64,000 bases of DNA from Macrostomum hystrix (lineage: Eukaryota > Animalia > Platyhelminthes). The translations under genes were made by a program, and so were the position numbers. Below the pieces are notes generated by a model. That model saw nothing but the letters and a program-made list of their open reading frames with translations, made no database searches and had not been told where the DNA came from. Numbering within the stretch: position 1 is the first letter of the stretch; the number at the start of each line of letters is the position of its first letter. The stretch is taken from the NCBI GenBank assembly GCA_950097015.1, contig CATNEN010000025.1:8742001-8806000 (forward strand), read 5' to 3'. Shown here in pieces: positions 1,079-55,900 of this stretch.

Positions 1079-1085
1079 CACTGGG

Positions 1086-10089: not shown

Positions 10090-10208
10090 AATCTCTGCAT
10101 TAATTGCATTCTCTGCATTAATCTCTGCATTAATCTCTGCATTAATCTCTGCATTAATTGCATTCTCTGCATTAATCTCTGCATTAATTGCATTAATCTC
10201 TGCATTAA
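10090..10208. repeat. Short remnant of the 12/18-bp (tctgcattaatc / tctgcattaattgcattc) minisatellite
   Basis: Same motif as the 1.1-1.5 kb arrays in units 2-4 but only a few units long. Confidence 0.9.
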
Positions 10209-15800: not shown

Positions 15801-16747
15801 CGCCGCCAACAACGACTACGACTCCGGAACCAACGACAACTACAGCGCCGCCAACAACGACTACGACTCCGGAACCAACGACAACTACAGCGCCGCCAAC
15901 AACGACTACGACTCCGGAACCAACGACAACTACAGCGCCGCCAACAACGACTACGACTCCGGAACCAACGACAACTACAGCGCCGCCAACAACGACTACG
16001 ACTCCGGAACCAACGACAACTACAGCGCCGCCAACAACGACTACGACTCCGGAACCAACGACAACTACAGCGCCGCCAACAACGACTACGACTCCGGAAC
16101 CAACGACAACTACAGCGCCGCCAACAACGACTACGACTCCGGAACCAACGACAACTACAGCGCCGCCAACAACGACTACGACTCCGGAACCAACGACAAC
16201 TACAGCGCCGCCAACAACGACTACGACTCCGGAACCAACGACAACTACAGCGCCGCCAACAACGACTACGACTCCGGAACCAACGACAACTACAGCGCCG
16301 CCAACAACGACTACGACTCCGGAACCAACGACAACTACAGCGCCGCCAACAACGACTACGACTCCGGAACCAACGACAACTACAGCGCCGCCAACAACGA
16401 CTACGACTCCGGAACCAACGACAACTACAGCGCCGCCAACAACGACTACGACTCCGGAACCAACGACAACTACAGCGCCGCCAACAACGACTACGACTCC
16501 GGAACCAACGAAAACTACAGCGCCGCAAACAACGACTACGACTCCGGAACCAACGACAACTACAGCGCCGCCAACAACGACTACGACTCCGGAACCAACG
16601 ACAACTACAGCGCCGCCAACAACGACTACGACTCCGGAACCAACGACAACTACAGCGCCGCCACCAATCAGAGCAGTGCCGTCAGCGGCAATACTATCAT
16701 TATTATTGATTTTGTTGTTGCCCTTGTTATCATCGTGGCTATTGTGA
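12822..16747 (+). CDS. CUB + C-type-lectin-like + mucin-stalk protein, copy 1 (divergent; exon 7 acceptor deleted, possibly secreted or a pseudogene)
   Basis: Hand-built exons 12822-12870, 13280-13365, 13761-13950, 14279-14375, 14463-14737, 14822-14984, all GT-AG with compatible phases. Signal peptide MTTKLSSLIVISLLLI; CUB-like YSKNLECTWTL..C..D..WC..FRSD..GLQL; CTLD-like YCYLV..LWTGY..DDCIV. About 111 bp missing at 15046-15049 relative to the other copies. Confidence 0.65.
12911..13203 (-). mobile_element. tRNA-derived CORE-type SINE in intron 1 (copies 25117-25410, 36925-37218, 49208-49501)
   Basis: Minus strand: box A TAGCCTAGTGG, box B GGTTCGATTCC, CORE-like ...cagcattgcttcagttcacccagctgttaaacggg, AT-rich tail. 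Confidence 0.8.
15146..16662 (+). repeat. 45-bp coding VNTR (APPTTTTTPEPTTTT), 33 units plus one 24-bp partial
   Basis: Unit count derived from ORF length. Confidence 0.95.
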
Positions 16748-16874
16748 TCGGTGTCGTTGTCTACTTTAGTCGTCAAAGAGGACAGCAGCCGCCATCAACT
16801 AATGGGGACTAGCCGCCACTGCGGGGTAATCAGAAGGAGAAAAAGGCCAGAAGCCGCTACTGGGGACGAACACT

Positions 16875-21284: not shown

Positions 21285-21468
21285 AAAATAAAAACTACAA
21301 TTAATATCTTCAAACTGTCATCCATGTTTTTGAGCTACATCTCTTTTTTATAAATGCTTCTGAAGTTAAATTGCATTTAGCGACTCGTAATTATCCCAAT
21401 TAACTTTCCCAACCCCTGTCATGCCTTCTAAATGATTTCATAAAAAATGGCTTCGATTTTTGGGGGAG

Positions 21469-25027: not shown

Positions 25028-28000
25028 ATGACTACAAAACTGAGCTCATTAATCGTTATTTCTCTGCTGCTGATCGGTAAGTTAAGTGGCTTGTTCGTTG
25101 AGGTTACATAATGATATTGATTATTAATTATATTCGCTGATTACACTTGCCCGTTGGGGCTACATGTGCAACACAGCACAGCCGTAGCTATTGCGCGGCT
25201 CATCTGAAGGCAGCATGCAGCTGTTCAGTCCATGGACCGGGGGCCACACCTACCCTCAATTACCAGCTAGTACCCGTTTTACAGCTGGGTGAACTGAAGC
25301 AATGCTGAGTGAGTTGTCCTGCTAGTGGACACGAATTGTGCCAGCGAAGGCCGAATCGAACCCCCGACCGTCAAGTCGATTAGTTTGAGAAAACCACTAG
25401 ACTACAAACCTGATTTCATATAATTTTATTAAAAATCTGTACTATTAATTATTTATTAAACATTGTCAGATACTGCCAGGTCTGCGGTTTGGCACTGCAT
25501 ACACAACGTACGCCACGAAGACTTCGTCAAAATCGGAGACATCAACGCGATTAGGGTGAGTAGTATGTTGCAAACGGCCTTTATCGACCAGAAGATAAGA
25601 AATCCTTAGATTAAAGGATACTTATGTACTGAGTACGTAAGCGATGCCTTAAGAATAGCCAAGTAGGCGAGTTTTATAAGCACCCAGTTGTGTCAGATTT
25701 GCAGCCAATAACAATAGACTGCGCTTCCAAAGGCTGTGTGCCTGTACGTGCACTGAGGAGGCCGCGACTCCCCACAAAAGTTTTTATCCGAGCTAATGCT
25801 GGCACTAGTTATATAGATGGCTGAATGTGAAGAAAATGCTATTTAAACGACTTGCTCAACCCCCAAGACACATTTAGCTTCTATTCGTGCGGTTCTATCC
25901 AGTCAGCTGCAAGGAGCCAGGATAAAATAAAGCTGCGTCTGCTGTTTCAGGTGATAACGTATGTCCGAGGCGATCCGGGCTATAGGAAGAACCTGGAGTG
26001 CAGGTATCTTCTGAGAGTGATCAACTATGACCAGCCCAGACAGATGTACATTGACGTGCCCGTGGTGGACTTTGACAACAATACTGACCCGTTTTGCAAC
26101 AAAACCGACGTGTTCAGCTTCTGGCATAAGTACAACGAGAGTGAGTGGCTTGGCTTAAGACAAAAGTTTCCTCTAAGTTTCCTCTCAACCCTCGACAATT
26201 CAACACTCCTATCAAGGAGAAATCGTTTATAGTAATTCAACTAAAACTCCGAGTCACAGTAATTTCGTCGGCTTTCGATGCAAATTAAAACTCTAACGTG
26301 GAAGTACAAGCAGGCAATGTGTGACTTTTTATTAAGGAAAATGTGGTGCTTTCGTTTTGGCTTTACGAGTGTAATTTTATTACTCTATAAATATTGCGAA
26401 CATCTCTGTTTAATTATTATTGAGTATTCACAACAGCTGCTATCAGCCGACTGCACACATTTCAGCTGCTTGGCGGCGGGAGTCCTGGTGCAGTGAATCG
26501 TCCGTGTCACGCAGTTTCCAATTCTTGCCGTTTAGACGGCAAATAATCAACTTGTGGGACTCGTGAGTAGCACTGCAGCTTCTTACTGAGCTCTCTTATG
26601 AGAATGCGAGTTGAGACCCTGCTGCTTCACTACCCACTTCACTCTGCAGGTCGTACTACCTGACTGCGGAATTCCAGTCTGACAATGAGCAAGTCCGCTC
26701 CGATGCCAAGGGATTGCAGATGAATGTGCAGGTGCTGGGCAGAAATTGCCACAGGAACATGCTGTATCTCGATAACTACTGCTACCTGGTCACTCCTGAG
26801 AATGTGTCGCCAGCTCAATCCAATCAGGTTGGAAAACTCTTACTCGGCAACTTTTTCACTGTCCGAAACGCCTCTTCTGGCCGGGATATCTTAGACTTTC
26901 TGCGCAGATTCTCTGAGAGAAGTACGCATTTCTTTTTCGAATTTCTGATGAGGATATTTTTGCTCAATTGTGCTCAATCTTGTCACCTCTTTGCGCTTCC
27001 CTCAGACAAAGCCAGGAAAGACGAGTATCCTTACGAGTCGCCACTGGCCCTGACTAATCTCAGACTGTGGACCGGCTACTTTGTGAACGAATACTCCTTC
27101 AGCGAGGAGGACCCGGTCATGTTTTACTCAGATCCGATAGACGACTGCATTGTCAAGCAAGTGAAAGTGTGAGTGCTGCTTCTCTATCCTGATTCTAGTC
27201 TAAAGGATATTGTAAATATCATATGGTTTAGAATGTCAATCATTCGATTTCAGGACTCGTGAGATTTTGACCGGCTGTAATAAAAACCCAGCGCCTGTAG
27301 CCCTTAATTGGCTTAGCAACGGCAGCGTGCATTTTTCCTGTGTGCCAGGCAACGATTCGATGCCAGCTCTGATCCAGTTCAGCCAGATTCCTAAAACCAA
27401 GGGCGACCTGCACCCGCAGCTGTTCCGCACCTGCGACATCGCGCCGCCAACAACGACTACGACTCCGGAACCAACGACAACTACAGCGCCGCCAACAACG
27501 ACTACGACTCCGGAACCAACGACAACTACAGCGCCGCCAACAACGACTACGACTCCGGAACCAACGACAACTACAGCGCCGCCAACAACGACTACGACTC
27601 CGGAACCAACGACAACTACAGCGCCGCCAACAGCGACCACGACTCCGGAACCAACGACAACTACAGCGCCGCCAACAACGACTACGACTCCGGAACCAAC
27701 GACAACTACAGCGCCGCCAACAACGACTACGACTCCGGAACCAACGACAACTACAGCGCCGCCAACAACGACTACGACTCCGGAACCAACGACAACTACA
27801 GCGCCGCCAACAACGACTACGACTCCGGAACCAACGACAACTACAGCGCCGCCAACAACGACTACGACTCCGGAACCAACGACAACTACAGCGCCGCCAA
27901 CAACGACTACGACTCCGGAACCAACGACAACTACAGCGCCGCCAACAACGACTACGACTCCGGAACCAACGACAACTACAGCGCCGCCAACAACGACTAC

Positions 28001-28748
28001 GACTCCGGAACCAACGACAACTACAGCGCCGCCAACAACGACTACGACTCCGGAACCAACGACAACTACAGCGCCGCCAACAACGACTACGACTCCGGAA
28101 CCAACGACAACTACAGCGCCGCCAACAACGACTACGACTCCGGAACCAACGACAACTACAGCGCCGCCAACAACGACTACGACTCCGGAACCAACGACAA
28201 CTACAGCGCCGCCAACAACGACTACGACTCCGGAACCAACGACAACTACAGCGCCGCCAACAACGACTACGACTCCGGAACCAACGACAACTACAGCGCC
28301 GCCAACAACGACTACGACTCCGGAACCAACGAAAACTACAGCGCCGCAAACAACGACTACGACTCCGGAACCAACGACAACTACAGCGCCGCCAACAACG
28401 ACTACGACTCCGGAACCAACGACAACTACAGCGCCGCCAACAACGACTACGACTCCGGAACCAACGACAACTACAGCGCCGCCAACAACGACTACGACTC
28501 CGGAACCAACGAAAACTACAGCGCCGCAAACAACGACTACGACTCCGGAACCAACGACAACTACAGCGCCGCCAACAACGACTACGACTCCGGAACCAAC
28601 GACAACTACAGCGCCGCCAACAACGACTACGACTCCGGAACCAACGACAACTACAGCGCCGCCACCAATCAGAGCAGTGCCGTCAGCGGCAATACTATCA
28701 TTATTATTGATTTTGTTGTTGCCCTTGTTATCATCGTGGCTATTGTGA
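25028..28748 (+). CDS. CUB + C-type-lectin-like + mucin-stalk surface protein, copy 2 (783 aa predicted)
   Basis: Exons 25028-25076, 25470-25555, 25951-26140, 26466-26562, 26650-26921, 27006-27168, 27254-28748; GT-AG, phases compatible, total 2352 nt with no internal stop; ends AVPSAAILSLLLILLLPLLSSWLL. Confidence 0.8.
27441..28663 (+). repeat. 45-bp coding VNTR, 27 units
   Basis: Unit count from ORF length. Confidence 0.95.
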
Positions 28749-31700
28749 TCGGTGTCGTTGTCTACTTTAGTCGTCAAAGAGGACAGCAGCCGCCATCAAC
28801 TAATGGGGACTAGCCGCCACTGCGGGGTAATCAGAAGGAGAAAAAGGCCAGAAGCCGCTACTGGGGACGAACACTCGGGATTTCAAAAGCGATAGAAACG
28901 CTGTGGCTAAGAGTGTCGGCTTGACTGTGGACAATGTCGAAGGCACTTTCTGAAGTCTGTTTGGTGGGCGCTTTTACTCATAATTTTGCATTGGCTAACA
29001 GCGTTGCTTAATTTTGTTTTGTTTATAAAGACAGAAATGTTTTTACGATCGCTTATTTCCGGTCTGCGAAGGAAGGAAAACCGGAATTGTCATTTTTCTG
29101 TTTTCATTTGAAATCTAAAATAATCTGTAATGCATGCTGAAGAAGCAGAAGTGCCCCATTGTCAGTCGACCTTTCGAACCCCCGCGCGTGCGCGTATCTA
29201 GCTTGTAATTGCGATCCCCGCGACCCAGTTCCTGTATTCCCATGTTTTACTTCTCTGTTTAGTAGTAATTGGTGATGGAGCTAATGATATATTGATAAGG
29301 TTCCGCAATTAAATTTATATTTCCCGAACATAGAATCCTTTTCCCCGGATTCCTATGATTCGAAATCCCCCATCCCCGGATCATTAATTGGTTAACTTGA
29401 CTTGCTACATATCGAATTAAAGTAAGGATGCGAGAGGAAGCAGTCTATCTATTTGTGTGGTTATTATTATCATTAGTTAGAGGTTAGGATATAATTCTCC
29501 ATCCTCAATACCGTTTTCTGATTGTTAGTTGTTAGATTGTTTCGTAATTGATTGTAGTAATTTGTCTGCAGCAATATATTTGAAGCAATACCTGTCTTTA
29601 ATTTCACTATTCTAATTATACGTTCCTTAAATATTTGGGCTTAAGTTATTATTGTAGTGTCTGTTATTAATGCTTCTGATGACAGCTGTTGTATCTTAAA
29701 TAACTGACGCAACGGAGATTCAGATTTGTTAGACTTAGAGTAATAAGGAAAACACGCCGATAGGCGGCACTCGGCAGGCAGACGAATAGGAGTGTGTATT
29801 TGATATATTATAGCAATAGCCGTACGATATACGCATGAGTGCAGAGGTCGGGGCTTTTATTTATAGGCCCAAAGGCGTGTGGAGAGAGCATTCTAGAAAG
29901 TTACTAAAAATAGACTACACGGGAAAGTTCTGGAACCAGTGATGGACTTAACGCCTTACGACAAAGAATAGAAATTTCTGGAAAGTTCCCGGAAATTACA
30001 GCAACAATAGTCTCAACAGCTGCAGCGACCCTTTTGACCCTTTCGGCCAATCGGCAATTTATTGGCCGATTTATAATATTTGTGAAGTTAAAATAGGAAA
30101 CCGCATCAAGAAAAAGATGTAGCTAGTTTAACCTGTCCTCAGGTGACGGCAATTCTTTCGGACTGTTCTAGACCTAGTGCCACGGCCATAGTATTCGCTA
30201 TACCATTATCTTAGTTCCTTTCGGCTTAGGCTCTATAGGTTCTTTAGGTTCTCAGTGCAGCTTTTTCGAAACAGTTGCAACTAGTTAGCTGATTTAAAAG
30301 TAATTAAGCTAGTCATTTTGATCAAATCAAAATGCAAAAGTACTGAGAACACGTCTAGTCCTTTATAAAGCTGAGCTGCGGAGCATGCTCCATTTTATCT
30401 AAGATTGCAATCTCTGCTTGAACAAACACATGGGCAACGTTGCGAACACGTTGTCGGGCCATTGTCATGTTCCTGTGCCGCATCGCCAAGATCACCAAAC
30501 TGAGCAGCGTCACTCTCAGGATGCTGTACAGGGCCTACGGTGAGAGTGCTCTCACCTACGGCGCCCCAATCTTGACTCTGATCTGCGTCACCAACCAGAT
30601 CAAGCTGCAAAAGATCTAAACCCTTGCTCTGCGCATCTGCTATGGTGTGCCTTCTTACCTGAGCACCGAATACCTTCACAAACTGGCCGACATGCCAATG
30701 CTCTCAGCCAGAGAAAGCAGCTCGGTGTGGCCTGCATGCATGCCTTTTTATTTCAATTTTTATTTCAATATTTCAATTTTTATTAGATCCCTTCTTTGTG
30801 CGGGATTTCCCCTGTATATTTCTGCCTATTTTATCTCCCAATGCGTGCCTAAATATAGCCTTGCAAATATTGAATATTTTTTTGTTTCATTAAGGCTCAA
30901 TATTCGCATAAAATAAGCCAAATCAAATCGAGTGTATATATATTATGAATTTCGATTAAATCCAATAATAGTCTGCGGCAGAGTTTTTCGAAACTGATCA
31001 GCAGCCCCAGTCAAATAGGGAATTCGTTTTAACAACAACCTATTATACCCTTGCCTCAACCATAACCCTAAACCTAAACCTAACCCTAAACCAAACCGTA
31101 ACCCTAAACCTAACCTTAATGTTGTGACTGATTGTGTGAGTACACTTGCCCTGTGAGTAAACCTAGCGTGAGTCACTTTATACACAAAATACAAGATACT
31201 AAATTGTGTATTTAGTATCTCCGTAATTAACCCGTCCAGTTTAACTAATCTTTAGCGGTATTCTTTAATTATTTGCGCGAATTCACTGAACAAGTTTCCA
31301 AGAAATTCGACTACTGCTTAATTCGACTTCTTTTTCTATTCCGGTATCACGCCGTATGCTACTATGGACTATGCTACTGTAAATATTTACTGCTTTGCCT
31401 TTATCACTTATTAGACTGACGTAATATTTTATTCCTATGTTACAGTTCTTTTCATTATGACGTATTTAAATGATGTGCTCTGTGGCTGCTATCTGCAATT
31501 AATAATTAATAATTGATTACACCTGCCCCAATTGGGTCAGATGTGCAGCCGACAGCACAGCCGCAGCTAATGCGCGGCGCATCTGAAGGCTGCGTACAGC
31601 TGTTCAGTCCATGGACTGGGGGGACGCCACACCCACCTTCAATTATCCCAGCTGATGCTGGTACCCATTTAACAGCTGGGTGAACTGAAGCAATGCAGAG

Positions 31701-32011: not shown

Positions 32012-33093
32012 TAATATCTGCATTAATTGCATTCTCTGCATTAATCTCTGCATTAATTGCATTCTCTGCATTAATCTCTGCATTAATCTCTGCATTAATC
32101 TCTGCATTAATTGCATTCTCTGCATTAATCTCTGCATTAATTGCATTCTTTGCATTAATCTCTGCATCAATTGCATTCTCTGCATTAATCTCTGCATCAA
32201 TTGCATTCTCTGCATTAATATCTGCATTAATCTCTGCATTAATATCTGCATTAATTGCATTCTCTGCATTAATCTCTGCATTAATTGCATTCTCTGCATT
32301 AATCTCTGCATTAATTGCATTCTCTGCATTAATCTCTGCATTAATCTCTGCATCAATTGCATTCTCTGCATTAATCTCTGCATTAATCTCTGCATTAATT
32401 GCATTCTCTGCATTAATCTCTGCATTAATCTCTGCATTAATTGCACTCTCTGCATTAATCTCTGCATTAATCTCTGCATTAATTGCATTCTTTGCATTAA
32501 TCTCTGCATTAATCTCTGCATTAATCTCTGCATTAATCTCTGCATTAATCTCTGCATTAATTGCATTCTCTGCATTAATCTCTGCATTAATTGCATTCTC
32601 TGCATTAATCTCTGCATTAATTGCATTCTCTGCATTAATCTCTGCATTAATTGCATTCTCTGCATTAATCTCTGCATTAATTGCACTCTTTGCATTAATC
32701 TCTGCATTAATTGCATTCTCTGCATTAATCTCTGCATTAATCTCTGCATTAATCTCTGCATTAATTGCACTCTTTGCATTAATCTCTGCATTAATTGCAT
32801 TCTCTGCATTAATCTCTGCATTAATTGCATTCTCTGCATTAATCTCTGCATTAATTGCATTCTCTGCATTAATCTCTGCATTAATTGCATTCTCTGCATT
32901 AATCTCTGCATTAATTGCATTCTCTGCATTAATCTCTGCATTAATTGCATTCTCTGCATTAATCTCTGCATTAATTGCATTCTCTGCATTAATATCTGCA
33001 TTAATTGCATTCTCTGCATTAATCTCTGCATTAATTGCATTCTCTGCATTAATCTCTGCATTAATTGCATTCTCTGCATTAATCTCTGCATTA
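32012..33093. repeat. 12/18-bp composite minisatellite, unit 3
   Basis: 192 bp shorter than in unit 2. Confidence 0.95.
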
Positions 33094-36000
33094 AAAATAA
33101 AAACTACAATTAATATCTTCAAACTGTCATCCATGTTTTTGAGCTACATCTCTTTTTTATAAATGCTTCTGAAGTTAAATTGCGTTTAGCGACTCGTAAT
33201 TATCCCAATTAACTTTCCCAACCCCTGTCATGCCTTCTAAATGATTTCATAAAAAATGGCTTCGATTTTTGGGGAGTGTCGTGAAATCACGAGTTATTAT
33301 TAACCAATCCTGTTCACTGTACACCCTTGTGGTAATCTCCTTTTCTAACCCCGGTTATTTGCCAGCTCAGCTCCACTCTTTGATCTCTATTATTGATTTT
33401 CCCCCGTGTCCCTTTACACTCTGACCCCTCCAGTCTAGCGTCTGCACCCATCATGTCTCTCCCTCTGCGCTCGTTATCGTGTGTACACCCTAGGGTTTTC
33501 ATACCCTCATTTGTCTCTCCTCGCTGTAGACCCCATCTGTCGCTTGTCCTTAAATTAAATCGGTCACGGAACTCAGATCCAAGATTTATTGTGGAAACGT
33601 TAAACGTTCTTCACTGGAATTCTTCTTCAGGAATTCTTCGCTGGAAGAGTCCGTGGTAGTTAAAAGCGGAAATTTTTTTCCTAATGTAGTGTCAGCTTGT
33701 TTGCCCTTCTATCTCCCCGTGTTATTATTCAGTACTTATTTTTAGACACGTGTTTTTTGCTAAAAGTCACCCACGCCAAGCCGGGCGGACCAGCCGGGGG
33801 AACGGACGCCCACCACCCCGCGAGCGCTACCCCTGGGCTACAGTCCCGGCCAATCAGCGAGCGACCCGGCCTCACTACCTGTCTACCCTCGGCAAGAAGC
33901 TACCCCGGGGCTCAGAACGGCGGTTGCAAGTCTACTGTGATTTGTCGCCTTGGCTACAGCCAGGCATCCACCTCGCCGATCGACCTAATTTGGGGTTAAA
34001 ATGACTCTATAAAAGGAAGCGTGTTTTTGCAGTGACTTTTATCGTTCTCCGCAATTCGCCTCACACTGTGAGAAGCACGTGCAAACCAGTCCACTTTGTT
34101 TTGTCTCTCCCCGCCCGACCACGCTCCGCTTGTTCAGTTAGGTAGCTTTCGGCGCTACGCGTCTTGAGAGTGCGCCGCTGACAAGGGTGGTCTAGATAGG
34201 CGCTTGTTGTCGAAGTCAGTACGTGCTCTCTTCGGAGACTCCGCCGTCACACAGAAGGAGTGCCAACCGATAGGATCTGTCGGGGCAGCGCTGAAAGCAG
34301 AGACAACCGGAGCCTCTCGGGAAGAGTAGGGCGCTGATTAGGCCAGTTTAAGTAAAATTGTTATATCCAAATTGTTAGACTAAACTTGCTTTTCACTGTG
34401 AGCGCGCTATAATTTATTTCCGTGTGAACATCCTTATTCTGTCAATGGAACTTTTAAATCAAGTAAACGAGATTAAAATCAATTCCTGCTCTTATCTGGA
34501 ATCTTAGCGAGTCACAACAGATTAAATCACTCACAATCAATTTATTCGAGTCTTCGCGTTCATACTGTGTTATTCTTTTTCATTGGGAGTTTCGCCGGGC
34601 CGGAGGAACACGCGGGTCCCATCGCTTATCTATTCCGCTTCGCTCGCTACCGCAGTCTCTATAAACGCTATATAATTCCAGATTCCCTGCTGCTATTGAA
34701 ACCATTGGTAGGACACCGACCCCGGTGAATAGTCGCTAGCTTTAAATTCCTCACGCTCCAGCTAGGACATTCATTTTATTACACTAACGAATTTTAAATG
34801 AATAGAGATGATAAACTTAGGGATTTGACTAAATCAATGAAGTATGTAACAAGAAGAAAAATCTAAAGCCTGCGGACTGGTCGCTGACTAGCTATTGTAA
34901 TTTGTAACAGAGTATGATGAGCTGACATTAATAATTGTATTCAGAAATGGACTACAAGTCAAAAAACTAAAAAAATACCCAGCGGGAAAGCCTACCTCGA
35001 ATCTAGCTGAATGTAACTCTAGTTTTTAGGATAGGTTTGAATTTTCTTTTTAGTGCACCAAAGATGCTTTTTGCATCAAAATCATGCACCAAAAAAATCG
35101 TCCAGTTTCAGAAAAATCGGCCAAACAAAAGTTTAACTTAAAATAGCAAGAATAAGTCTAGTTATATATTCTAGCTATATAGTGTCTGTCGTTTTTCGAG
35201 AAAAAAAAATTTTGTTTTAAAATATTTTCATAGCACAGAATAACAAAACTTTACAATTATATTTTTGTTCTTACGCGAAACAAAGTCTGGGTTGTAAAAT
35301 AGCAATCTCTTAATTAAGTATGATAATAAAAAAGAAAAAAGTGAAACGTCTTACCATTGGTACAGTTCATTTTTTAACTTTTCTTGTGTTCTCGCGCGCC
35401 GACTAACTAGCAAGCCTACATTTTATACTATAGATTTGACTGGTTCCTACGTCTCGCTTTTTTTGGTGGAAATTACCAAGGTACGGAAATGTTAAAACCT
35501 CTATCAGAACGTTTACAACTCTTATGTGTTTCTTTCTCATTTTGAACTTTTTATTATTACTTATTTCGATACAGCAATTATGTACAATATAATGTTGTAG
35601 GTATTGCTAATGTAGCTATTTAGCTGGTCAATCAAAGCACTTTGCTGAGTTTTTTTAATCAAAATATACATTTCAACTTGCTAAGGTTTGCTAAGGTAAT
35701 AGACAAATCAACGAAAATATACAAATCAGTTCCTTTAAAAGTATTTCGAGTTAGTGGCGTGACATTTTTTTAAAGAAATGTTTATTTAAATTGAACTATT
35801 TTAAGAAAATATATTATAAATTGTATTAGGAATTTAAGGGATACGTTGCTGTCTTAAAAAACTATCCTAATTGCATGCAATGCAGAAGATGTTGAACTAT
35901 TTAGATCCCCATTTTACCTTACAATATGTGATTGTTGTTTTTTACATCTTGTGATATGATTTTGTTAGTATGCTAAAAAGTTTTTTAAACTCTTTTTAGT

Positions 36001-36835: not shown

Positions 36836-39800
36836 ATGACTACAAAACTGAGCTCATTAATCGTTATTTCTCTGCTGCTGATCGGTAAGTTAAGTGGCTT
36901 GTTCGTTGAGGTTACATAATGATATTGATTATTAATTATATTCGCTGATTACACTTGCCCGTTGGGGCTACATGTGCAACACAGCACAGCCGTAGCTATT
37001 GCGCGGCTCATCTGAAGGCAGCATGCAGCTGTTCAGTCCATGGACCGGGGGCCACACCTACCCTCAATTACCAGCTAGTACCCGTTTTACAGCTGGGTGA
37101 ACTGAAGCAATGCTGAGTGAGTTGTCCTGCTAGTGGACACGAATTGTGCCAGCGAAGGCCGAATCGAACCCCCGACCGTCAAGTCGATTAGTTTGAGAAA
37201 ACCACTAGACTACAAACCTGATTTCATATAATTTTATTAAAAATCTGTACTATTAATTATTTATTAAACATTGTCAGATACTGCCAGGTCTGCGGTTTGG
37301 CACTGCATACACAACGTACGCCACGAAGACTTCGTCAAAATCGGAGACATCAACGCGATTAGGGTGAGTAGTATGTTGCAAACGGCCTTTATCGACCAGA
37401 AGATAAGAAATCCTTAGATTAAAGGATACTTATGTACTGAGTACGTAAGCGATGCCTTAAGAATAGCCAAGTAGGCGAGTTTTATAAGCACCCAGTTGTG
37501 TCAGATTTGCAGCCAATAACAATAGACTGCGCTTCCAAAGGCTGTGTGCCTGTACGTGCACTGAGGAGGCCGCGACTCCCCACAAAAGTTTTTATCCGAG
37601 CTAATGCTGGCACTAGTTATATAGATGGCTGAATGTGAAGAAAATGCTATTTAAACGACTTGCTCAACCCCCAAGACACATTTAGCTTCTATTCGTGCGG
37701 TTCTATCCAGTCAGCTGCAAGGAGCCAGGATAAAATAAAGCTGCGTCTGCTGTTTCAGGTGATAACGTATGTCCGAGGCGATCCGGGCTATAGGAAGAAC
37801 CTGGAGTGCAGGTATCTTCTGAGAGTGATCAACTATGACCAGCCCAGACAGATGTACATTGACGTGCCCGTGGTGGACTTTGACAACAATACTGACCCGT
37901 TTTGCAACAAAACCGACGTGTTCAGCTTCTGGCATAAGTACAACGAGAGTGAGTGGCTTGGCTTAAGACAAAAGTTTCCTCTAAGTTTCCTCTCAACCCT
38001 CGACAATTCAACACTCCTATCAAGGAGAAATCGTTTATAGTAATTCAACTAAAACTCCGAGTCACAGTAATTTCGTCGGCTTTCGATGCAAATTAAAACT
38101 CTAACGTGGAAGTACAAGCAGGCAATGTGTGACTTTTTATTAAGGAAAATGTGGTGCTTTCGTTTTGGCTTTACGAGTGTAATTTTATTACTCTATAAAT
38201 ATTGCGAACATCTCTGTTTAATTATTATTGAGTATTCACAACAGCTGCTATCAGCCGACTGCACACATTTCAGCTGCTTGGCGGCGGGAGTCCTGGTGCA
38301 GTGAATCGTCCGTGTCACGCAGTTTCCAATTCTTGCCGTTTAGACGGCAAATAATCAACTTGTGGGACTCGTGAGTAGCACTGCAGCTTCTTACTGAGCT
38401 CTCTTATGAGAATGCGAGTTGAGACCCTGCTGCTTCACTACCCACTTCACTCTGCAGGTCGTACTACCTGACTGCGGAATTCCAGTCTGACAATGAGCAA
38501 GTCCGCTCCGATGCCAAGGGATTGCAGATGAATGTGCAGGTGCTGGGCAGAAATTGCCACAGGAACATGCTGTATCTCGATAACTACTGCTACCTGGTCA
38601 CTCCTGAGAATGTGTCGCCAGCTCAATCCAATCAGGTTGGAAAACTCTTACTCGGCAACTTTTTCACTGTCCGAAACGCCTCTTCTGGCCGGGATATCTT
38701 AGACTTTCTGCGCAGATTCTCTGAGAGAAGTACGCATTTCTTTTTCGAATTTCTGATGAGGATATTTTTGCTCAATTGTGCTCAATCTTGTCACCTCTTT
38801 GCGCTTCCCTCAGACAAAGCCAGGAAAGACGAGTATCCTTACGAGTCGCCACTGGCCCTGACTAATCTCAGACTGTGGACCGGCTACTTTGTGAACGAAT
38901 ACTCCTTCAGCGAGGAGGACCCGGTCATGTTTTACTCAGATCCGATAGACGACTGCATTGTCAAGCAAGTGAAAGTGTGAGTGCTGCTTCTCTATCCTGA
39001 TTCTAGTCTAAAGGATATTGTAAATATCATATGGTTTAGAATGTCAATCATTCGATTTCAGGACTCGTGAGATTTTGACCGGCTGTAATAAAAACCCAGC
39101 GCCTGTAGCCCTTAATTGGCTTAGCAACGGCAGCGTGCATTTTTCCTGTGTGCCAGGCAACGATTCGATGCCAGCTCTGATCCAGTTCAGCCAGATTCCT
39201 AAAACCAAGGGCGACCTGCACCCGCAGCTGTTCCGCACCTGCGACATCGCGCCGCCAACAACGACTACGACTCCGGAACCAACGACAACTACAGCGCCGC
39301 CAACAACGACTACGACTCCGGAACCAACGACAACTACAGCGCCGCCAACAACGACTACGACTCCGGAACCAACGACAACTACAGCGCCGCCAACAACGAC
39401 TACGACTCCGGAACCAACGACAACTACAGCGCCGCCAACAACGACTACGACTCCGGAACCAACGACAACTACAGCGCCGCCAACAACGACTACGACTCCG
39501 GAACCAACGACAACTACAGCGCCGCCAACAGCGACCACGACTCCGGAACCAACGACAACTACAGCGCCGCCAACAACGACTACGACTCCGGAACCAACGA
39601 CAACTACAGCGCCGCCAACAACGACTACGACTCCGGAACCAACGACAACTACAGCGCCGCCAACAACGACTACGACTCCGGAACCAACGACAACTACAGC
39701 GCCGCCAACAACGACTACGACTCCGGAACCAACGACAACTACAGCGCCGCCAACAACGACTACGACTCCGGAACCAACGACAACTACAGCGCCGCCAACA

Positions 39801-40646
39801 ACGACTACGACTCCGGAACCAACGACAACTACAGCGCCGCCAACAACGACTACGACTCCGGAACCAACGACAACTACAGCGCCGCCAACAACGACTACGA
39901 CTCCGGAACCAACGACAACTACAGCGCCGCCAACAACGACTACGACTCCGGAACCAACGACAACTACAGCGCCGCCAACAACGACTACGACTCCGGAACC
40001 AACGACAACTACAGCGCCGCCAACAACGACTACGACTCCGGAACCAACGACAACTACAGCGCCGCCAACAACGACTACGACTCCGGAACCAACGACAACT
40101 ACAGCGCCGCCAACAACGACTACGACTCCGGAACCAACGACAACTACAGCGCCGCCAACAACGACTACGACTCCGGAACCAACGACAACTACAGCGCCGC
40201 CAACAACGACTACGACTCCGGAACCAACGAAAACTACAGCGCCGCAAACAACGACTACGACTCCGGAACCAACGACAACTACAGCGCCGCCAACAACGAC
40301 TACGACTCCGGAACCAACGACAACTACAGCGCCGCCAACAACGACTACGACTCCGGAACCAACGACAACTACAGCGCCGCCAACAACGACTACGACTCCG
40401 GAACCAACGAAAACTACAGCGCCGCAAACAACGACTACGACTCCGGAACCAACGACAACTACAGCGCCGCCAACAACGACTACGACTCCGGAACCAACGA
40501 CAACTACAGCGCCGCCAACAACGACTACGACTCCGGAACCAACGACAACTACAGCGCCGCCACCAATCAGAGCAGTGCCGTCAGCGGCAATACTATCATT
40601 ATTATTGATTTTGTTGTTGCCCTTGTTATCATCGTGGCTATTGTGA
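36836..40646 (+). CDS. CUB + C-type-lectin-like + mucin-stalk surface protein, copy 3 (813 aa predicted)
   Basis: Exons 36836-36884, 37278-37363, 37759-37948, 38274-38370, 38458-38729, 38814-38976, 39062-40646; no difference from copy 2 seen except 2 extra stalk units. Confidence 0.8.
39249..40561 (+). repeat. 45-bp coding VNTR, 29 units
   Basis: Unit count from ORF length. Confidence 0.95.
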
Positions 40647-43600
40647 TCGGTGTCGTTGTCTACTTTAGTCGTCAAAGAGGACAGCAGCCGCCATCAACTA
40701 ATGGGGACTAGCCGCCACTGCGGGGTAATCAGAAGGAGAAAAAGGCCAGAAGCCGCTACTGGGGACGAACACTCGGGATTTCAAAAGCGATAGAAACGCT
40801 GTGGCTAAGAGTGTCGGCTTGACTGTGGACAATGTCGAAGGCACTTTCTGAAGTCTGTTTGGTGGGCGCTTTTACTCATAATTTTGCATTGGCTAACAGC
40901 GTTGCTTAATTTTGTTTTGTTTATAAAGACAGAAATGTTTTTACGATCGCTTATTTCCGGTCTGCGAAGGAAGGAAAACCGGAATTGTCATTTTTCTGTT
41001 TTCATTTGAAATCTAAAATAATCTGTAATGCATGCTGAAGAAGCAGAAGTGCCCCATTGTCAGTCGACCTTTCGAACCCCCGCGCGTGCGCGTATCTAGC
41101 TTGTAATTGCGATCCCCGCGACCCAGTTCCTGTATTCCCATGTTTTACTTCTCTGTTTAGTAGTAATTGGTGATGGAGCTAATGATATATTGATAAGGTT
41201 CCGCAATTAAATTTATATTTCCCGAACATAGAATCCTTTTCCCCGGATTCCTATGATTCGAAATCCCCCATCCCCGGATCATTAATTGGTTAACTTGACT
41301 TGCTACATATCGAATTAAAGTAAGGATGCGAGAGGAAGCAGTCTATCTATTTGTGTGGTTATTATTATCATTAGTTAGAGGTTAGGATATAATTCTCCAT
41401 CCTCAATACCGTTTTCTGATTGTTAGTTGTTAGATTGTTTCGTAATTGATTGTAGTAATTTGTCTGCAGCAATATATTTGAAGCAATACCTGTCTTTAAT
41501 TTCACTATTCTAATTATACGTTCCTTAAATATTTGGGCTTAAGTTATTATTGTAGTGTCTGTTATTAATGCTTCTGATGACAGCTGTTGTATCTTAAATA
41601 ACTGACGCAACGGAGATTCAGATTTGTTAGACTTAGAGTAATAAGGAAAACACGCCGATAGGCGGCACTCGGCAGGCAGACGAATAGGAGTGTGTATTTG
41701 ATATATTATAGCAATAGCCGTACGATATACGCATGAGTGCAGAGGTCGGGGCTTTTATTTATAGGCCCAAAGGCGTGTGGAGAGAGCATTCTAGAAAGTT
41801 ACTAAAAATAGACTACACGGGAAAGTTCTGGAACCAGTGATGGACTTAACGCCTTACGACAAAGAATAGAAATTTCTGGAAAGTTCCCGGGAATTACAGC
41901 AACAATAGTCTCAACAGCTGCAGCGACCCTTTTGACCCTTTCGGCCAATCGGCAATTTATTGGCCGATTTATAATATTTGTGAAGTTAAAATAGGAGGCC
42001 GCATCAAGAAAAAGATGTAGCTAGTTTAACCTGTCCTCAGGTGACGGCAATTCTTTCGGACTGTTCTAGACCTAGTGCCACGGCCATAGTATTCGCTATA
42101 CCATTATCTTAGTTCCTTTCGGCTTAGGCTCTATAGGTTCTTTAGGTTCTCAGTGCAGCTTTTTCGAAACAGTTGCAACTAGTTAGCTGATTTAAAAGTA
42201 ATTAAGCTAGTCATTTTGATCAAATCAAAATGCAAAAGTACTGAGAACACGTCTAGTCCTTTATAAAGCTGAGCTGCGGAGCATGCTCCATTTTATCTAA
42301 GATTGCAATCTCTGCTTGAACAAACACATGGGCAACGTTGCGAACACGTTGTCGGGCCATTGTCATGTTCCTGTGCCGCATCGCCAAGATCACCAAACTG
42401 AGCAGCGTCACTCTCAGGATGCTGTACAGGGCCTACGGTGAGAGTGCTCTCACCTACGGCGCCCCAATCTTGACTCTGATCTGCGTCACCAACCAGATCA
42501 AGCTGCAAAAGATCTAAACCCTTGCTCTGCGCATCTGCTATGGTGTGCCTTCTTACCTGAGCACCGAATACCTTCACAAACTGGCCGACATGCCAATGCT
42601 CTCAGCCAGAGAAAGCAGCTCGGTGTGGCCTGCATGCATGCCTTTTTATTTCAATTTTTATTTCAATATTTCAATTTTTATTAGATCCCTTCTTTGTGCG
42701 GGATTTCCCCTGTATATTTCTGCCTATTTTATCTCCCAATGCGTGCCTAAATATAGCCTTGCAAATATTGAATATTTTTTTGTTTCATTAAGGCTCAATA
42801 TTCGCATAAAATAAGCCAAATCAAATCGAGTGTATATATATTATGAATTTCGATTAAATCCAATAATAGTCTGCGGCAGAGTTTTTCGAAACTGATCAGC
42901 AGCCCCAGTCAAATAGGGAATTCGTTTTAACAACAACCTATTATACCCTTGCCTCAACCATAACCCTAAACCTAAACCTAACCCTAAACCAAACCGTAAC
43001 CCTAAACCTAACCTTAATGTTGTGACTGATTGTGTGAGTACACTTGCCCTGTGAGTAAACCTAGCGTGAGTCACTTTATACACAAAATACAAGATACTAA
43101 ATTGTGTATTTAGTATCTCCGTAATTAACCCGTCCAGTTTAACTAATCTTTAGCGGTATTCTTTAATTATTTGCGCGAATTCACTGAACAAGTTTCCAAG
43201 AAATTCGACTACTGCTTAATTCGACTTCTTTTTCTATTCCGGTATCACGCCGTATGCTACTATGGACTATGCTACTGTAAATATTTACTGCTTTGCCTTT
43301 ATCACTTATTAGACTGACGTAATATTTTATTCCTATGTTACAGTTCTTTTCATTATGACGTATTTAAATGATGTGCTCTGTGGCTGCTATCTGCAATTAA
43401 TAATTAATAATTGATTACACCTGCCCCAATTGGGTCAGATGTGCAGCCGACAGCACAGCCGCAGCTAATGCGCGGCGCATCTGAAGGCTGCGTACAGCTG
43501 TTCAGTCCATGGACTGGGGGGACGCCACACCCACCTTCAATTATCCCAGCTGATGCTGGTACCCATTTAACAGCTGGGTGAACTGAAGCAATGCAGAGTT

Positions 43601-52100: not shown

Positions 52101-52929
52101 ACCAACGACAACTACAGCGCCGCCAACAACGACTACGACTCCGGAACCAACGACAACTACAGCGCCGCCAACAACGACTACGACTCCGGAACCAACGACA
52201 ACTACAGCGCCGCCAACAACGACTACGACTCCGGAACCAACGACAACTACAGCGCCGCCAACAACGACTACGACTCCGGAACCAACGACAACTACAGCGC
52301 CGCCAACAACGACTACGACTCCGGAACCAACGACAACTACAGCGCCGCCAACAACGACTACGACTCCGGAACCAACGACAACTACAGCGCCGCCAACAAC
52401 GACTACGACTCCGGAACCAACGACAACTACAGCGCCGCCAACAACGACTACGACTCCGGAACCAACGACAACTACAGCGCCGCCAACAACGACTACGACT
52501 CCGGAACCAACGAAAACTACAGCGCCGCAAACAACGACTACGACTCCGGAACCAACGACAACTACAGCGCCGCCAACAACGACTACGACTCCGGAACCAA
52601 CGACAACTACAGCGCCGCCAACAACGACTACGACTCCGGAACCAACGACAACTACAGCGCCGCCAACAACGACTACGACTCCGGAACCAACGAAAACTAC
52701 AGCGCCGCAAACAACGACTACGACTCCGGAACCAACGACAACTACAGCGCCGCCAACAACGACTACGACTCCGGAACCAACGACAACTACAGCGCCGCCA
52801 ACAACGACTACGACTCCGGAACCAACGACAACTACAGCGCCGCCACCAATCAGAGCAGTGCCGTCAGCGGCAATACTATCATTATTATTGATTTTGTTGT
52901 TGCCCTTGTTATCATCGTGGCTATTGTGA
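49119..52929 (+). CDS. CUB + C-type-lectin-like + mucin-stalk surface protein, copy 4 (813 aa predicted)
   Basis: Exons 49119-49167, 49561-49646, 50042-50231, 50557-50653, 50741-51012, 51097-51259, 51345-52929; translations match copy 3. Confidence 0.8.
51532..52844 (+). repeat. 45-bp coding VNTR, 29 units
   Basis: Unit count from ORF length. Confidence 0.95.
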
Positions 52930-55900
52930 TCGGTGTCGTTGTCTACTTTAGTCGTCAAAGAGGACAGCAGCCGCCATCAACTAATGGGGACTAGCCGCCA
53001 CTGCGGGGTAATCAGAAGGAGAAAAAGGCCAGAAGCCGCTACTGGGGACGAACACTCGGGATTTCAAAAGCGATAGAAACGCTGTGGCTAAGAGTGTCGG
53101 CTTGACTGTGGACAATGTCGAAGGCACTTTCTGAAGTCTGTTTGGTGGGCGCTTTTACTCATAATTTTGCATTGCCTAACAGCGTTGCTTAATTTTGTTT
53201 TGTTTATAAAGACAGAAATGTTTTTACGATCGCTTATTTCCGGTCTGCGAAGGAAGGAAAACCGGAATTGTCATTTTTCTGTTTTCATTTGAAATCTAAA
53301 ATAATCTGTAATGCATGCTGAAGAAGCAGAAGTGCCCCATTGTCAGTCGACCTTTCGAACCCCCGCGCGTGCGCGTATCTAGCTTGTAATTGCGATCCCC
53401 GCGACCCAGTTCCTGTATTCCCATGTTTTACTTCTCTGTTTAGTAGTAATTGGTGATGGAGCTAATGATATATTGATAAGGTTCCGCAATTAAATTTATA
53501 TTTCCCGAACATAGAATCCTTTTCCCCGGATTCCTATGATTCGAAATCCCCCATCCCCGGATCATTAATTGGTTAACTTGACTTGCTACATATCGAATTA
53601 AAGTAAGGATGCGAGAGGAAGCAGTCTATCTATTTGTGTGGTTATTATTATCATTAGTTAGAGGTTAGGATATAATTCTCCATCCTCAATACCGTTTTCT
53701 GATTGTTAGTTGTTAGATTGTTTCGTAATTGATTGTAGTAATTTGTCTGCAGCAATATATTTGAAGCAATACCTGTCTTTAATTTCACTATTCTAATTAT
53801 ACGTTCCTTAAATATTTGGGCTTAAGTTATTATTGTAGTGTCTGTTATTAATGCTTCTGATGACAGCTGTTGTATCTTAAATAACTGACGCAACGGAGAT
53901 TCAGATTTGTTAGACTTAGAGTAATAAGGAAAACACGCCGATAGGCGGCACTCGGCAGGCAGACGAATAGGAGTGTGTATTTGATATATTATAGCAATAG
54001 CCGTACGATATACGCATGAGTGCAGAGGTCGGGGCTTTTATTTATAGGCCCAAAGGCGTGTGGAGAGAGCATTCTAGAAAGTTACTAAAAATAGACTACA
54101 CGGGAAAGTTCTGGAACCAGTGATGGACTTAACGCCTTACGACAAAGAATAGAAATTTCTGGAAAGTTCCCGGAAATTACAGCAACAATAGTCTCAACAG
54201 CTGCAGCGACCCTTTTGACCCTTTCGGCCAATCGGCAATTTATTGGCCGATTTATAATATTTGTGAAGTTAAAATAGGAGGCCGCATCAAGAAAAAGATG
54301 TAGCTAGTTTAACCTGTCCTCAGGTGACGGCAATTCTTTCGGACTGTTCTAGACCTAGTGCCACGGCCATAGTATTCGCTATACCATTATCTTAGTTCCT
54401 TTCGGCTTAGGCTCTATAGGTTCTTTAGGTTCTCAGTGCAGCTTTTTCGAAACAGTTGCAACTAGTTAGCTGATTTAAAAGTAATTAAGCTAGTCATTTT
54501 GATCAAATCAAAATGCAAAAGTACTGAGAACACGTCTAGTCCTTTATAAAGCTGAGCTGCGGAGCATGCTCCATTTTATCTAAGATTGCAATCTCTGCTT
54601 GAACAAACACATGGGCAACGTTGCGAACACGTTGTCGGGCCATTGTCATGTTCCTGTGCCGCATCGCCAAGATCACCAAACTGAGCAGCGTCACTCTCAG
54701 GATGCTGTACAGGGCCTACGGTGAGAGTGCTCTCACCTACGGCGCCCCAATCTTGACTCTGATCTGCGTCACCAACCAGATCAAGCTGCAAAAGATCTAA
54801 ACCCTTGCTCTGCGCATCTGCTATGGTGTGCCTTCTTACCTGAGCACCGAATACCTTCACAAACTGGCCGACATGCCAATGCTCTCAGCCAGAGAAAGCA
54901 GCTCGGTGTGGCCTGCATGCATGCCTTTTTATTTCAATTTTTATTTCAATATTTCAATTTTTATTAGATCCCTTCTTTGTGCGGGATTTCCCCTGTATAT
55001 TTCTGCCTATTTTATCTCCCAATGCGTGCCTAAATATAGCCTTGCAAATATTGAATATTTTTTTGTTTCATTAAGGCTCAATATTCGCATAAAATAAGCC
55101 AAATCAAATCGAGTGTATATATATTATGAATTTCGATTAAATCCAATAATAGTCTGCGGCAGAGTTTTTCGAAACTGATCAGCAGCCCCAGTCAAATAGG
55201 GAATTCGTTTTAACAACAACCTATTATACCCTTGCCTCAACCATAACCCTAAACCTAAACCTAACCCTAAACCAAACCGTAACCCTAAACCTAACCTTAA
55301 TGTTGTGACTGATTGTGTGAGTACACTTGCCCTGTGAGTAAACCTAGCGTGAGTCACTTTATACACAAAATACAAGATACTAAATTGTGTATTTAGTATC
55401 TCCGTAATTAACCCGTCCAGTTTAACTAATCTTTAGCGGTATTCTTTAATTATTTGCGCGAATTCACTGAACAAGTTTCCAAGAAATTCGACTACTGCTT
55501 AATTCGACTTCTTTTTCTATTCCGGTATCACGCCGTATGCTACTATGGACTATGCTACTGTAAATATTTACTGCTTTGCCTTTATCACTTATTAGACTGA
55601 TGTAATATTTTATTCCTATGTTACAGTTCTTTTCATTATGACGTATTTAAATGATGTGCTCTGTGGCTGCTATCTGCAATTAATAATTAATAATTGATTA
55701 CACCTGCCCCAATTGGGTCAGATGTGCAGCCGACAGCACAGCCGCAGCTAATGCGCGGCGCATCTGAAGGCTGCGTACAGCTGTTCAGTCCATGGACTGG
55801 GGGGACGCCACACCCACCTTCAATTATCCCAGCTGATGCTGGTACCCATTTAACAGCTGGGTGAACTGAAGCAATGCAGAGTTAAGTGTCTTGCTAAAGG

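What the first reader, a model, noticed from the sequence alone, without database searches (positions are those of the whole stretch)
28656..28813. Two membrane anchors encoded in overlapping frames: GPI-like tail versus transmembrane helix one base away
Seen in all four copies (16655-16812, 28656-28813, 40554-40711, 52837-52994). In frame with the stalk, the protein ends APPPIRAVPSAAILSLLLILLLPLLSSWLL*, a small-residue spacer plus terminal hydrophobic run. In the -1 frame the same DNA reads TNQSSAVSGNTIIIIDFVVALVIIVAIVIGVVVYF-SRQRGQQPPSTNGD*, a typical type-I TM helix with basic residues inside and a short cytoplasmic tail. Adding one A at the end of the last repeat (gcg ccg cc[a] acc aat cag) would fuse the stalk to the TM frame. 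A possible acceptor aatcag|AGC also sits at the start of the TM frame. Known: TM-to-GPI conversion by small mutations in a TM exon is described for CEACAMs. Inference: either a fixed 1-nt deletion converted a TM receptor to a GPI-anchored one before amplification, or both forms are made by slippage, frameshifting or splicing. Caveat: NTT-rich hydrophobic codons tend to stay hydrophobic when shifted.
Basis: partly seen in the sequence, partly recalled or inferred. Interest (0 to 1): 0.8.

Follow-up and report, generated by a model that had tools for sequence, protein, structure and literature searches.

The report
Frameshifted membrane anchor in flatworm receptor
Four tandem copies of a flatworm surface-receptor gene carry a real, fixed one-base deletion just before their membrane-spanning segment, so the protein ends in a short greasy tail (possibly a lipid-anchor signal) instead of a helix plus inner tail, a kind of switch already known from mammalian CEACAM genes.

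Summary
All four 158-nt tails are identical. Frame 0, fixed by a consensus phase-2 splice into the last exon, reads Thr/Pro stalk then APPPIRAVPSAAILSLLLILLLPLLSSWLL*. One base away lies a typical transmembrane (TM) helix with SRQRG and a short tail.

It is not an assembly error. Contigs from a second study, and from a run labelled as another species, cross the junction with no indel.

Those runs also hold a diverged paralog or allele with one extra base at 28686-28689. It reads PEPTT-VVPPADNT-IIIIDFVV, so stalk and TM helix are in frame. There the TM-frame stop (28811) is GAG, giving a longer inner tail.

The only detectable relatives, Macrostomum lignano 'CUB domain-containing' proteins, end in a TM helix plus a Cys-rich/basic tail.

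Dual decoding has no support: no slippery site, no homopolymer, no GT in the array, and RNA-like contigs are colinear.

GPI anchoring is plausible but unproven: an S-A-A site is present, the polar spacer is missing.

A single-base deletion making a GPI signal is described for Old World monkey CEACAMs.

The scan noted the same tail 75 kb downstream (s1-408161).

The parts
27254..28748 (+). Last exon (exon 7) of copy 2, coding part in frame 0: end of the ectodomain (..TREILTGCNKNP..LFRTCDI), the Thr/Pro stalk and the hydrophobic C-terminus. Stop TGA at 28746-28748.
   Evidence: Donor AAAGT|GTGAGT (exon 6 ends at 27168, phase 2) and acceptor tttcag|G (exon 7 starts at 27254, phase 2) fit each other. 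tblastn of M. lignano P0008 and P0007 aligns up to LFRTC in this frame.
27441..28668 (+). 45-nt tandem array, 27.3 units, reading APPTTTTTPEPTTTT in frame 0 (mucin-like stalk). It is open in all three + frames.
   Evidence: (no GT, no stop trinucleotides, 6.6% T).
28686..28689 (+). Site of the 1-nt gap relative to the in-frame paralog (CAG-CGGCAAT against CAGCCGACAAT). Upstream of it frame 0 is the shared frame. Downstream the ancestral frame is frame 2.
   Evidence: Loose ends and contig pieces (X5 records 11 and 12; X2 record 2: 143 letters laid on 142, 13 differences, 1 gap). Alignment.
28656..28813 (+). The reported overlap region in copy 2: frame-0 tail APPPIRAVPSAAILSLLLILLLPLLSSWLL* over frame-2 TNQSS..TM..SRQRGQQPPSTNGD*.
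28697..28768 (+). Relic TM helix IIIIDFVVALVIIVAIVIGVVVYF in frame 2 (best 19-residue Kyte-Doolittle window 3.3), followed by SRQRG. It is not reached by the frame that the splice sites set.
   Evidence: In the paralog it is in frame with the stalk.
28811..28813 (+). TAG that ends the relic TM frame. The paralog has GAG here, and its TM frame runs on for about 33 more codons.
   Evidence: table 3 (28811 T>G in X2, X5 and X9). Partial rebuild.
28814..29199 (+). 3' untranslated region as far as RNA-like contigs follow the window.
   Evidence: tables 2 and 8: X5, X9 and X10 cover up to about 29150-29199 and then fall to low or zero depth. The DNA run X2 is covered throughout.
16655..16812 (+). 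Identical tail of copy 1. The gene itself has a 111-nt deletion at the start of exon 7.
40554..40711 (+). Identical tail of copy 3.
52837..52994 (+). Identical tail of copy 4.
25028..27168 (+). Exons 1-6 of copy 2: signal peptide MTTKLSSLIVISLLLI, then an ectodomain homologous to M. lignano 'CUB domain-containing' proteins. Copies 2-4 encode identical ectodomains.

Best explanation
One base was lost at 28686-28689, just 5' of the TM-coding stretch, before the roughly 12-kb unit was amplified. Translation set by the splice sites now enters the T-rich TM codons one base out of register. There NTT and NTC codons read as TTN Leu/Phe or TCN Ser, until a TGA at 28746. The product ends in about 20 hydrophobic residues, AAILSLLLILLLPLLSSWLL, with no cytoplasmic residues. 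The TM-helix reading is a relic and not a second product. Shown: the frame, the deletion relative to a co-existing in-frame paralog, TM-anchored homologues, and the junction in independent runs. Inferred: the tail keeps the protein on the membrane, either as a GPI-attachment signal (omega site S in VPS-A-A; my estimate about 0.4) or as a tail-less anchor (about 0.35). Either would give a non-signalling partner of the in-frame TM paralog.
For: Splice phases fix frame 0 for the last exon, and homology to M. lignano proteins runs in that frame up to LFRTC. Window-type junction contigs without an indel are X5 record 11 (28639-28780, a different study) and X9 record 21 (28635-28746, 0 differences, run labelled as another organism). 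The in-frame paralog is seen in X5 loose ends at 28604 and 28690 and in X2 record 2 with exactly one extra letter. It reads PPTTVVPPADNT-IIIIDFVV, and TAG 28811 is GAG there. All full-length relatives found in 1.8 billion representatives (P0002, P0008, P0007, all M. lignano) end in a TM helix plus a Cys-rich/basic tail, encoded in the same last exon. Leu codons of the frame-0 tail are 9 of 11 TTR, against 4 of 27 in the other exons (p=2e-4). That is foreign codon usage, as expected for a recently shifted frame. Precedent: a single-nucleotide deletion in a TM exon gave GPI signals in Old World monkey CEACAMs (PMC2832619).
Against: GPI attachment is untested. The only acceptable omega triplet, S-A-A, abuts the hydrophobic run with no 5-10-residue polar spacer (a rule from the GPI literature, applied by eye; no predictor was available). 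The stalk frame of the paralog is inferred from its alignment to the window's array and not from its own upstream exons. X5 and X9 are not on record as RNA; their RNA nature is inferred from coverage that stops near 29200. Contigs drop rare variants, so a minor spliced or slipped form cannot be excluded. The copies are too alike (98.6-100%) to show selection on either frame.
Confidence: 0.72

Rival explanations
1. The window-type genes are young pseudogenes. On this view the frameshift is a plain loss of function, carried along by the amplification or spread by gene conversion, and the hydrophobic tail is an accident of T-rich codons.
For: Copy 1 already has a 111-nt deletion that removes the exon-7 acceptor. 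The TM frame has a stop (28811) that the paralog lacks. The copies are so alike that decay would not yet show. The frame-0 tail has foreign codon usage.
Against: Copies 2-4 keep all seven exons open with identical ectodomains. RNA-like contigs of two run sets carry the window-type junction at depths similar to the paralog's. The unit stands at about 7 times the paralog's depth in DNA. A shifted tail that stays open and hydrophobic is a 0.05-0.1% outcome, which fits survival of a still-anchored product.
Confidence: 0.18
2. This is an assembly or polishing error: the true sequence has one more base and the genes encode ordinary TM receptors.
For: All four copies are identical, as a collapsed or polished repeat could be. 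The extra-base form does exist in the same runs.
Against: Short-read contigs from a different study (X5) and from a run labelled as another organism (X9) reproduce the window junction exactly. The form with the extra base differs at 13 other positions in 142 nt and in its 3' UTR, so it is another gene and not the corrected window. In DNA run X2 the window type is the major form at 28736: depth 1487 in all, of which 137 is the paralog.
Confidence: 0.03
3. One gene makes both anchors, by -1 ribosomal frameshifting, by transcript slippage, or by splicing to aatcag|AGC.
For: The TM frame is open from 27395 to 28810, and a phase-0 AG sits at 28672. T-ending codons are enriched in the helix, p=0.004.
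Against: The last exon holds no X XXY YYZ heptamer in frame 0 and no run of 6 or more identical bases. There is no GT in any of the four arrays. The five in-frame GT donors upstream (27297, 27327, 27342, 27377, 27422) all fit the donor consensus poorly. No AG in 27374-27420 is in the phase needed to enter the array in frame 2; I worked this out by hand from the sequence, not from a tool output. RNA-like contigs are colinear across 28635-28780. A separate in-frame paralog already supplies the TM form.
Confidence: 0.04
4. The real stalk frame is the TM frame, so the protein has an Asn/Asp/Tyr-rich (NDNYSAANNDYDSGT) stalk and an ordinary TM anchor.
For: That frame is continuous from 27395 to the TM helix and tail.
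Against: The frame is closed upstream of 27395, and no acceptor in the right phase exists for the phase-2 donor of exon 6. The conserved ectodomain end (..LPALIQF..LFRTC) lies in frame 0, directly abutting the array. The paralog joins the TP frame to the TM helix.
Confidence: 0.03

Closest known systems
Primate CEACAM5-8: GPI-anchored members derived from a CEACAM1-like TM exon (Naghibalhossaini & Stanners 2004, as cited and summarised in PMC2832619)
   Same: A small mutation inside the TM-coding exon of a fast-evolving, tandemly amplified surface-receptor family. [quoted passage not shown] It leaves a C-terminal hydrophobic peptide without a cytoplasmic tail. TM paralogs with similar ectodomains persist beside it.
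   Different: Anchoring of the CEACAMs by GPI is experimentally shown, and here it is not. The present tail has no polar spacer. The ectodomain is CUB-like/lectin-like plus mucin stalk, not Ig. The host is a macrostomid flatworm. The TM and tail are in the same exon as the stalk.
Macrostomum lignano 'CUB domain-containing proteins' (PAA88469.1, PAA70984.1, A0A1I8GC78)
   Same: The ectodomain is homologous at 35-50% identity up to the LFRTC motif. The last exon carries the ectodomain end plus the anchor. The genes are arranged in tandem.
   Different: They have no mucin stalk. The TM helix and Cys-rich/basic tail are in frame. Their GC-rich TM codons give no hydrophobic shifted frame.
Frameshift robustness of hydrophobicity profiles (Bartonek, Braun & Zagrovic 2020, PMC7084103)
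   Same: A one-base shift of a hydrophobic, NTN-rich coding stretch stays hydrophobic.
   Different: That is a statistical tendency. Here the shifted frame also had to stay open for 27 codons, which resampling makes rare.

Membership tests
GPI-anchored protein (C-terminal GPI attachment signal) | N-terminal signal peptide | tested here: inconclusive
   Exon 1 reads MTTKLSSLIVISLLLI and is followed by a G|GTAAGT donor. This was judged by eye; no SignalP was available.
GPI-anchored protein (C-terminal GPI attachment signal) | Small residues at omega and omega+2 | tested here: met
   There is one acceptable triplet, S-A-A in VPSAA. The other candidates have Pro or Ile at omega+2 (sequence; rule from the GPI literature).
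GPI-anchored protein (C-terminal GPI attachment signal) | Polar spacer of about 5-10 residues between omega+2 and the hydrophobic tail | tested here: not met
   ILSLLL follows omega+2 directly.
GPI-anchored protein (C-terminal GPI attachment signal) | Hydrophobic stretch that reaches the C-terminus, with no cytoplasmic residues | tested here: met
   The protein ends AAILSLLLILLLPLLSSWLL*. The best 17-residue Kyte-Doolittle window scores 2.5.
GPI-anchored protein (C-terminal GPI attachment signal) | Release by PI-PLC, or a lipid-modified C-terminus | not testable with these tools
   This needs an experiment. NetGPI, PredGPI and big-PI are also not on hand.
Type-I single-pass TM receptor of the Macrostomum CUB-like/lectin-like family | Homologous ectodomain | tested here: met
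   phmmer E-values of 6e-27 to 1e-4 against M. lignano proteins only. tblastn hits over exons 3-7.
Type-I single-pass TM receptor of the Macrostomum CUB-like/lectin-like family | TM helix and cytoplasmic tail in frame with the ectodomain | tested here: not met
   Out of frame by one base in all four copies. Met in the paralog and in the M. lignano proteins.
CUB domain / C-type lectin domain (Pfam PF00431, PF00059) | Significant match to the family profile | tested here: not met
   No Pfam hit at E<=1 for the window's exon pieces or for P0002, P0007 and P0010. The AlphaFold model was unusable, pLDDT 31. ESM Atlas neighbours are CUB plus Lectin_C at 0.84-0.85, which is a lead only. UniProt names the M. 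lignano proteins 'CUB domain-containing'.
Programmed -1 ribosomal frameshift or transcriptional slippage | Slippery heptamer X XXY YYZ in the zero frame, or a homopolymer run | tested here: not met
   None in 27254-28813.
Alternative splicing giving TM and GPI isoforms (NCAM or CD58 type) | A usable donor and acceptor pair, and spliced transcripts | tested here: not met
   There is no GT in the array. The upstream donors fit the consensus poorly. RNA-like contigs are colinear. Only contigs were available, no raw RNA reads.

The most novel reading that the evidence does not exclude
The T-rich TM-coding stretch of this stalked subfamily is a selected two-frame 'anchor switch'. Because both registers encode a membrane anchor, +/-1 indels can toggle tandem paralogs between a signalling TM form and a tail-less or GPI form. 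That would generate paired receptors with the same hypervariable ectodomain. The T3 enrichment (p=0.004) and the 0.05-0.1% chance of an open hydrophobic shifted frame would then be its footprint.
Probability: 0.1. Interest if true: 0.7.

Novelty: new member of a known kind. Interest (0 to 1): 0.4.

Why it matters
The finding gives a clean invertebrate example of a route known from primate CEACAMs. One lost base in a TM exon turns a signalling receptor into a tail-less, perhaps lipid-anchored, form, and that form is then amplified beside its TM paralog. In a flatworm family with hypervariable ectodomains, this hints at paired signalling and non-signalling (decoy or shed) receptors. Practically, it tells annotators that the frame is real. 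These genes should not be 'corrected' to TM proteins, and the TM-helix reading here should not be annotated as a product.

Tried and rejected
Three word-index protein searches were blank: the TM-frame tail within the 472-aa open frame, the pre-repeat 62 residues, and a 79-aa TM-frame piece. Each sees only proteins of 0.55-1.75 times the query length, so a blank says little.

Pfam on six exon pieces and on three M. lignano homologues gave nothing for the ectodomain.

AlphaFold on P0008 with a 10-row alignment gave pLDDT 31, so no fold search was run on it.

The repeat finder over the whole window only re-listed the 45-nt array.

It gives a plausible APPTNQSS reading, but the paralog alignment has no gap there and one gap at 28686-28689.

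Entry into the array in the TM frame through an alternative acceptor was rejected, because no AG lies in the required phase. I worked this out by hand from the coordinates.

The paralog's full sequence could not be obtained. Read laying allows one call, and 19 of its difference rows were hidden. The rebuild is therefore partial and only indicative.

Full report
**What is in the sequence**

The window holds four tandem copies of a roughly 12-kb unit. Copies 2-4 are 98.6-99.9% alike, and copy 1 is about 95% alike over the gene. Each unit carries a seven-exon gene.

The two readings are exactly as described.
- Frame 0 ends ...TTTTAPPPIRAVPSAAILSLLLILLLPLLSSWLL*, with its stop at 28746-28748.
- Frame 2 reads TNQSSAVSGNT-IIIIDFVVALVIIVAIVIGVVVYF-SRQRGQQPPSTNGD*, with its stop at 28811-28813.

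The 45-nt array (27441-28668, 27.3 units) has only 6.6% T, no GT and no stop trinucleotide. All three forward frames are therefore open, and the TM frame runs back to 27395 as (NDNYSAANNDYDSGT)n.

**Which frame is used**

Exon 6 ends at 27168 on a consensus donor (AAAGT|GTGAGT, phase 2). Exon 7 starts at 27254 after tttcag (phase 2). Joined, they read ..CIVKQVK-V-TREILTGCNKNP..LPALIQF..LFRTCDIAPP and run straight into the Thr/Pro repeat.

That stretch is homologous, in this frame, to Macrostomum lignano proteins up to their LFRTC motif. No AG between 27374 and 27420 is in the phase needed to enter the array in frame 2; I checked this by hand from the coordinates. So the stalk is APPTTTTTPEPTTTT, and translation reaches the frame-0 tail.

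**Is it an assembly error**

No. Contigs of public runs were laid on 28530-30500.
- X5 is from a different study. Its contig across 28639-28780 has one substitution and no gap.
- X9 is labelled as another organism. Its contig across 28635-28746 has no difference at all.
- In the DNA run X2 the window type is the major form: depth about 1487 at 28736, of which 137 belongs to a variant.

X5, X9 and X10 cover the tail and about 400 nt behind it, then fall to low or zero depth. X2 is covered throughout. This is the pattern of RNA, though the runs are not on record as RNA.

**The key result: an in-frame paralog**

The same runs hold a diverged version, with 13 differences in 142 nt and about 13% divergence in the 3' UTR. 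Its letters are visible as loose ends: behind 28604, GTAGTGCCTCCAGCC; before 28690, GCCACCAACCACAGTAGTGCCTCCAGCCGA.

X2's contig of this version places 143 letters on 142 window positions, which is exactly one extra base.

Read from the Thr/Pro frame, the paralog gives PEPTT-VVPPADNT-IIIIDFVV.. . Stalk and TM helix are in one frame. Two of the six substitutions 5' of the gap are silent in frame 0 (CCG/CCT, GCG/GCC), as expected if frame 0 is the shared frame up to the gap.

In the paralog the TAG at 28811 is GAG. A partial rebuild from the listed differences continues the cytoplasmic tail for about 33 more codons. That rebuild is incomplete, because some difference rows were hidden.

In X5 the two forms have equal depth, about 190 each. 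In X2 the unit is about seven times deeper than the paralog. Both forms also occur in X9.

**The family**

An exhaustive HMMER search with the exon 5-6 stretch found only seven proteins among 1.8 billion representatives, all from M. lignano. The full-length ones (P0002 and P0008 at 426 and 428 aa; P0007 at 368 aa) have a signal peptide and the homologous ectodomain. Directly after LFRTC they have a TM helix with a Cys-rich/basic cytoplasmic tail. This is encoded in the same last exon.

The family is thus ancestrally type-I TM. The mucin stalk is an insertion of this subfamily.

Pfam sees no domain, and the structure model was unusable. ESM Atlas neighbours are CUB plus C-type lectin proteins, at scores that count only as a lead. 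UniProt calls the M. lignano proteins CUB domain-containing.

The window's organism is therefore a macrostomid flatworm. Earlier notes of this scan say the same. A 2023 paper reports genome assemblies of M. cliftonense and M. hystrix (PMC10468722). I did not establish which species this is.

**Is the second anchor more than chance**

Synonymous codons of the TM-frame peptide were resampled, uniformly or with the gene's own usage. The shifted frame stayed open for at least 24 codons with a hydrophobic end in 0.1% and 0.05% of trials.

The reason is codon choice.
- 14 of 24 helix codons end in T, against 29 of 110 same-class (I, V, F, A, L, G, Y) codons in the other exons (p=0.004).
- Conversely, the frame-0 tail uses TTR for 9 of 11 leucines, where the rest of the gene uses CTN for 23 of 27 (p=2e-4).

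The frame-0 tail thus wears the TM frame's clothes, which points to TM as the native reading. The GC-rich TM exons of M. lignano give no hydrophobic shifted frame.

The rarity is best read as survivorship. Among possible frameshifts, one that keeps a membrane anchor is the one that can persist and be amplified. A selected two-frame switch is not excluded, and I keep it as the novel case.

**Dual decoding**

The last exon has no X XXY YYZ heptamer in frame 0 and no homopolymer of 6 or more. None of the four arrays contains a GT. The five upstream GT sites that would join in frame to 28673 or 28678 fit the donor consensus poorly. RNA-like contigs are colinear across aatcag|AGC. Contigs hide rare forms, so a minor isoform cannot be excluded, but nothing calls for one.

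**What the product does**

This part is inferred. With a signal peptide, a long O-glycosylated stalk and a 20-residue hydrophobic end without cytoplasmic residues, the protein should stay membrane-bound.

For a GPI signal, the small S-A-A triplet and the terminal hydrophobic run are present. The usual polar spacer is not. No predictor could be run. My estimates are about 0.4 for GPI, about 0.35 for a tail-less TM anchor, and about 0.2 for a decaying gene.

Copies 2-4 keep all exons open and encode identical ectodomains. Copy 1 has a 111-nt deletion over the exon-7 acceptor.

**Comparison with what is known**

GPI-anchored primate CEACAMs arose by small changes in a CEACAM1-like TM exon. [quoted passage not shown] That frameshifts tend to preserve hydrophobicity is also described (PMC7084103).

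The present case works like the CEACAM one, in a different protein family and phylum. It is a new member of a known kind.

**Limits**

- Read laying gave contigs, not reads.
- The paralog is known only in pieces.
- The joined protein was not searched or folded, by rule.

Noticed in passing
window 15046-15130 (copy 1; corresponds to 27233-27343 of copy 2): Copy 1 lacks 111 nt covering the intron-6 acceptor and the first 90 nt of exon 7 (the Cys-bearing TREILTGCNKNP..HFSCV part). A phase-compatible acceptor gttcag|C remains further on. Copy 1 may be a shortened variant or a pseudogene.
   Followed up: partly
window 25400-25560, 25945-26060, 26700-26800 (copy-2 coordinates): Copy 1 differs from copies 2-4 in amino-acid-changing patches in exons 2, 3 and 5, while flanking introns are nearly identical. 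Copies 2-4 encode identical ectodomains.
   Followed up: partly
window 15156-16667, 27441-28668, 39249-40566, 51532-52849: The 45-nt stalk array varies in length between copies (33.6, 27.3, 29.3 and 29.3 units). It carries the same rare variant units (PTKTT, APQ, TATTT) in copies 2-4.
   Followed up: no
window 20011-21285, 32012-33094, 43910-45376 (also 10089-10208): An intergenic 30-nt minisatellite (TAATCTCTGCATTAATTGCATTCTCTGCAT) of 22-40 units sits in every unit. It is open in several frames on both strands (for example AEINAENAIN), giving long mechanical ORFs.
   Followed up: no
window 29150-29199: RNA-like contigs of X5 and X9 carry 161 extra letters between 29150 and 29152 and leave the window sequence at 29199. 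The expressed copies, or the other species, differ from the window in the 3' UTR by insertions or deletions.
   Followed up: no
window 28530-30500 (depths): In DNA run X2 the unit's word depth (about 930-1000) is about seven times that of the in-frame paralog (about 136). This suggests more window-type copies than the four seen here, in line with notes of further arrays 70-122 kb downstream.
   Followed up: no
L001 3301-8067 and 10001-12978 (M. lignano NIVC01000186.1): The M. lignano homologues are also tandem neighbours, a 457-aa and a 428-aa gene on the same strand. UniProt entry P0010 (714 aa) looks like a fusion of two adjacent genes.
   Followed up: partly
window 197-1671, 7625-7866, 63117-63823: Several unrelated short tandem arrays (periods 21, 15, 33, 12, 20 and 40 nt) lie at the window's edges.
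   Followed up: no
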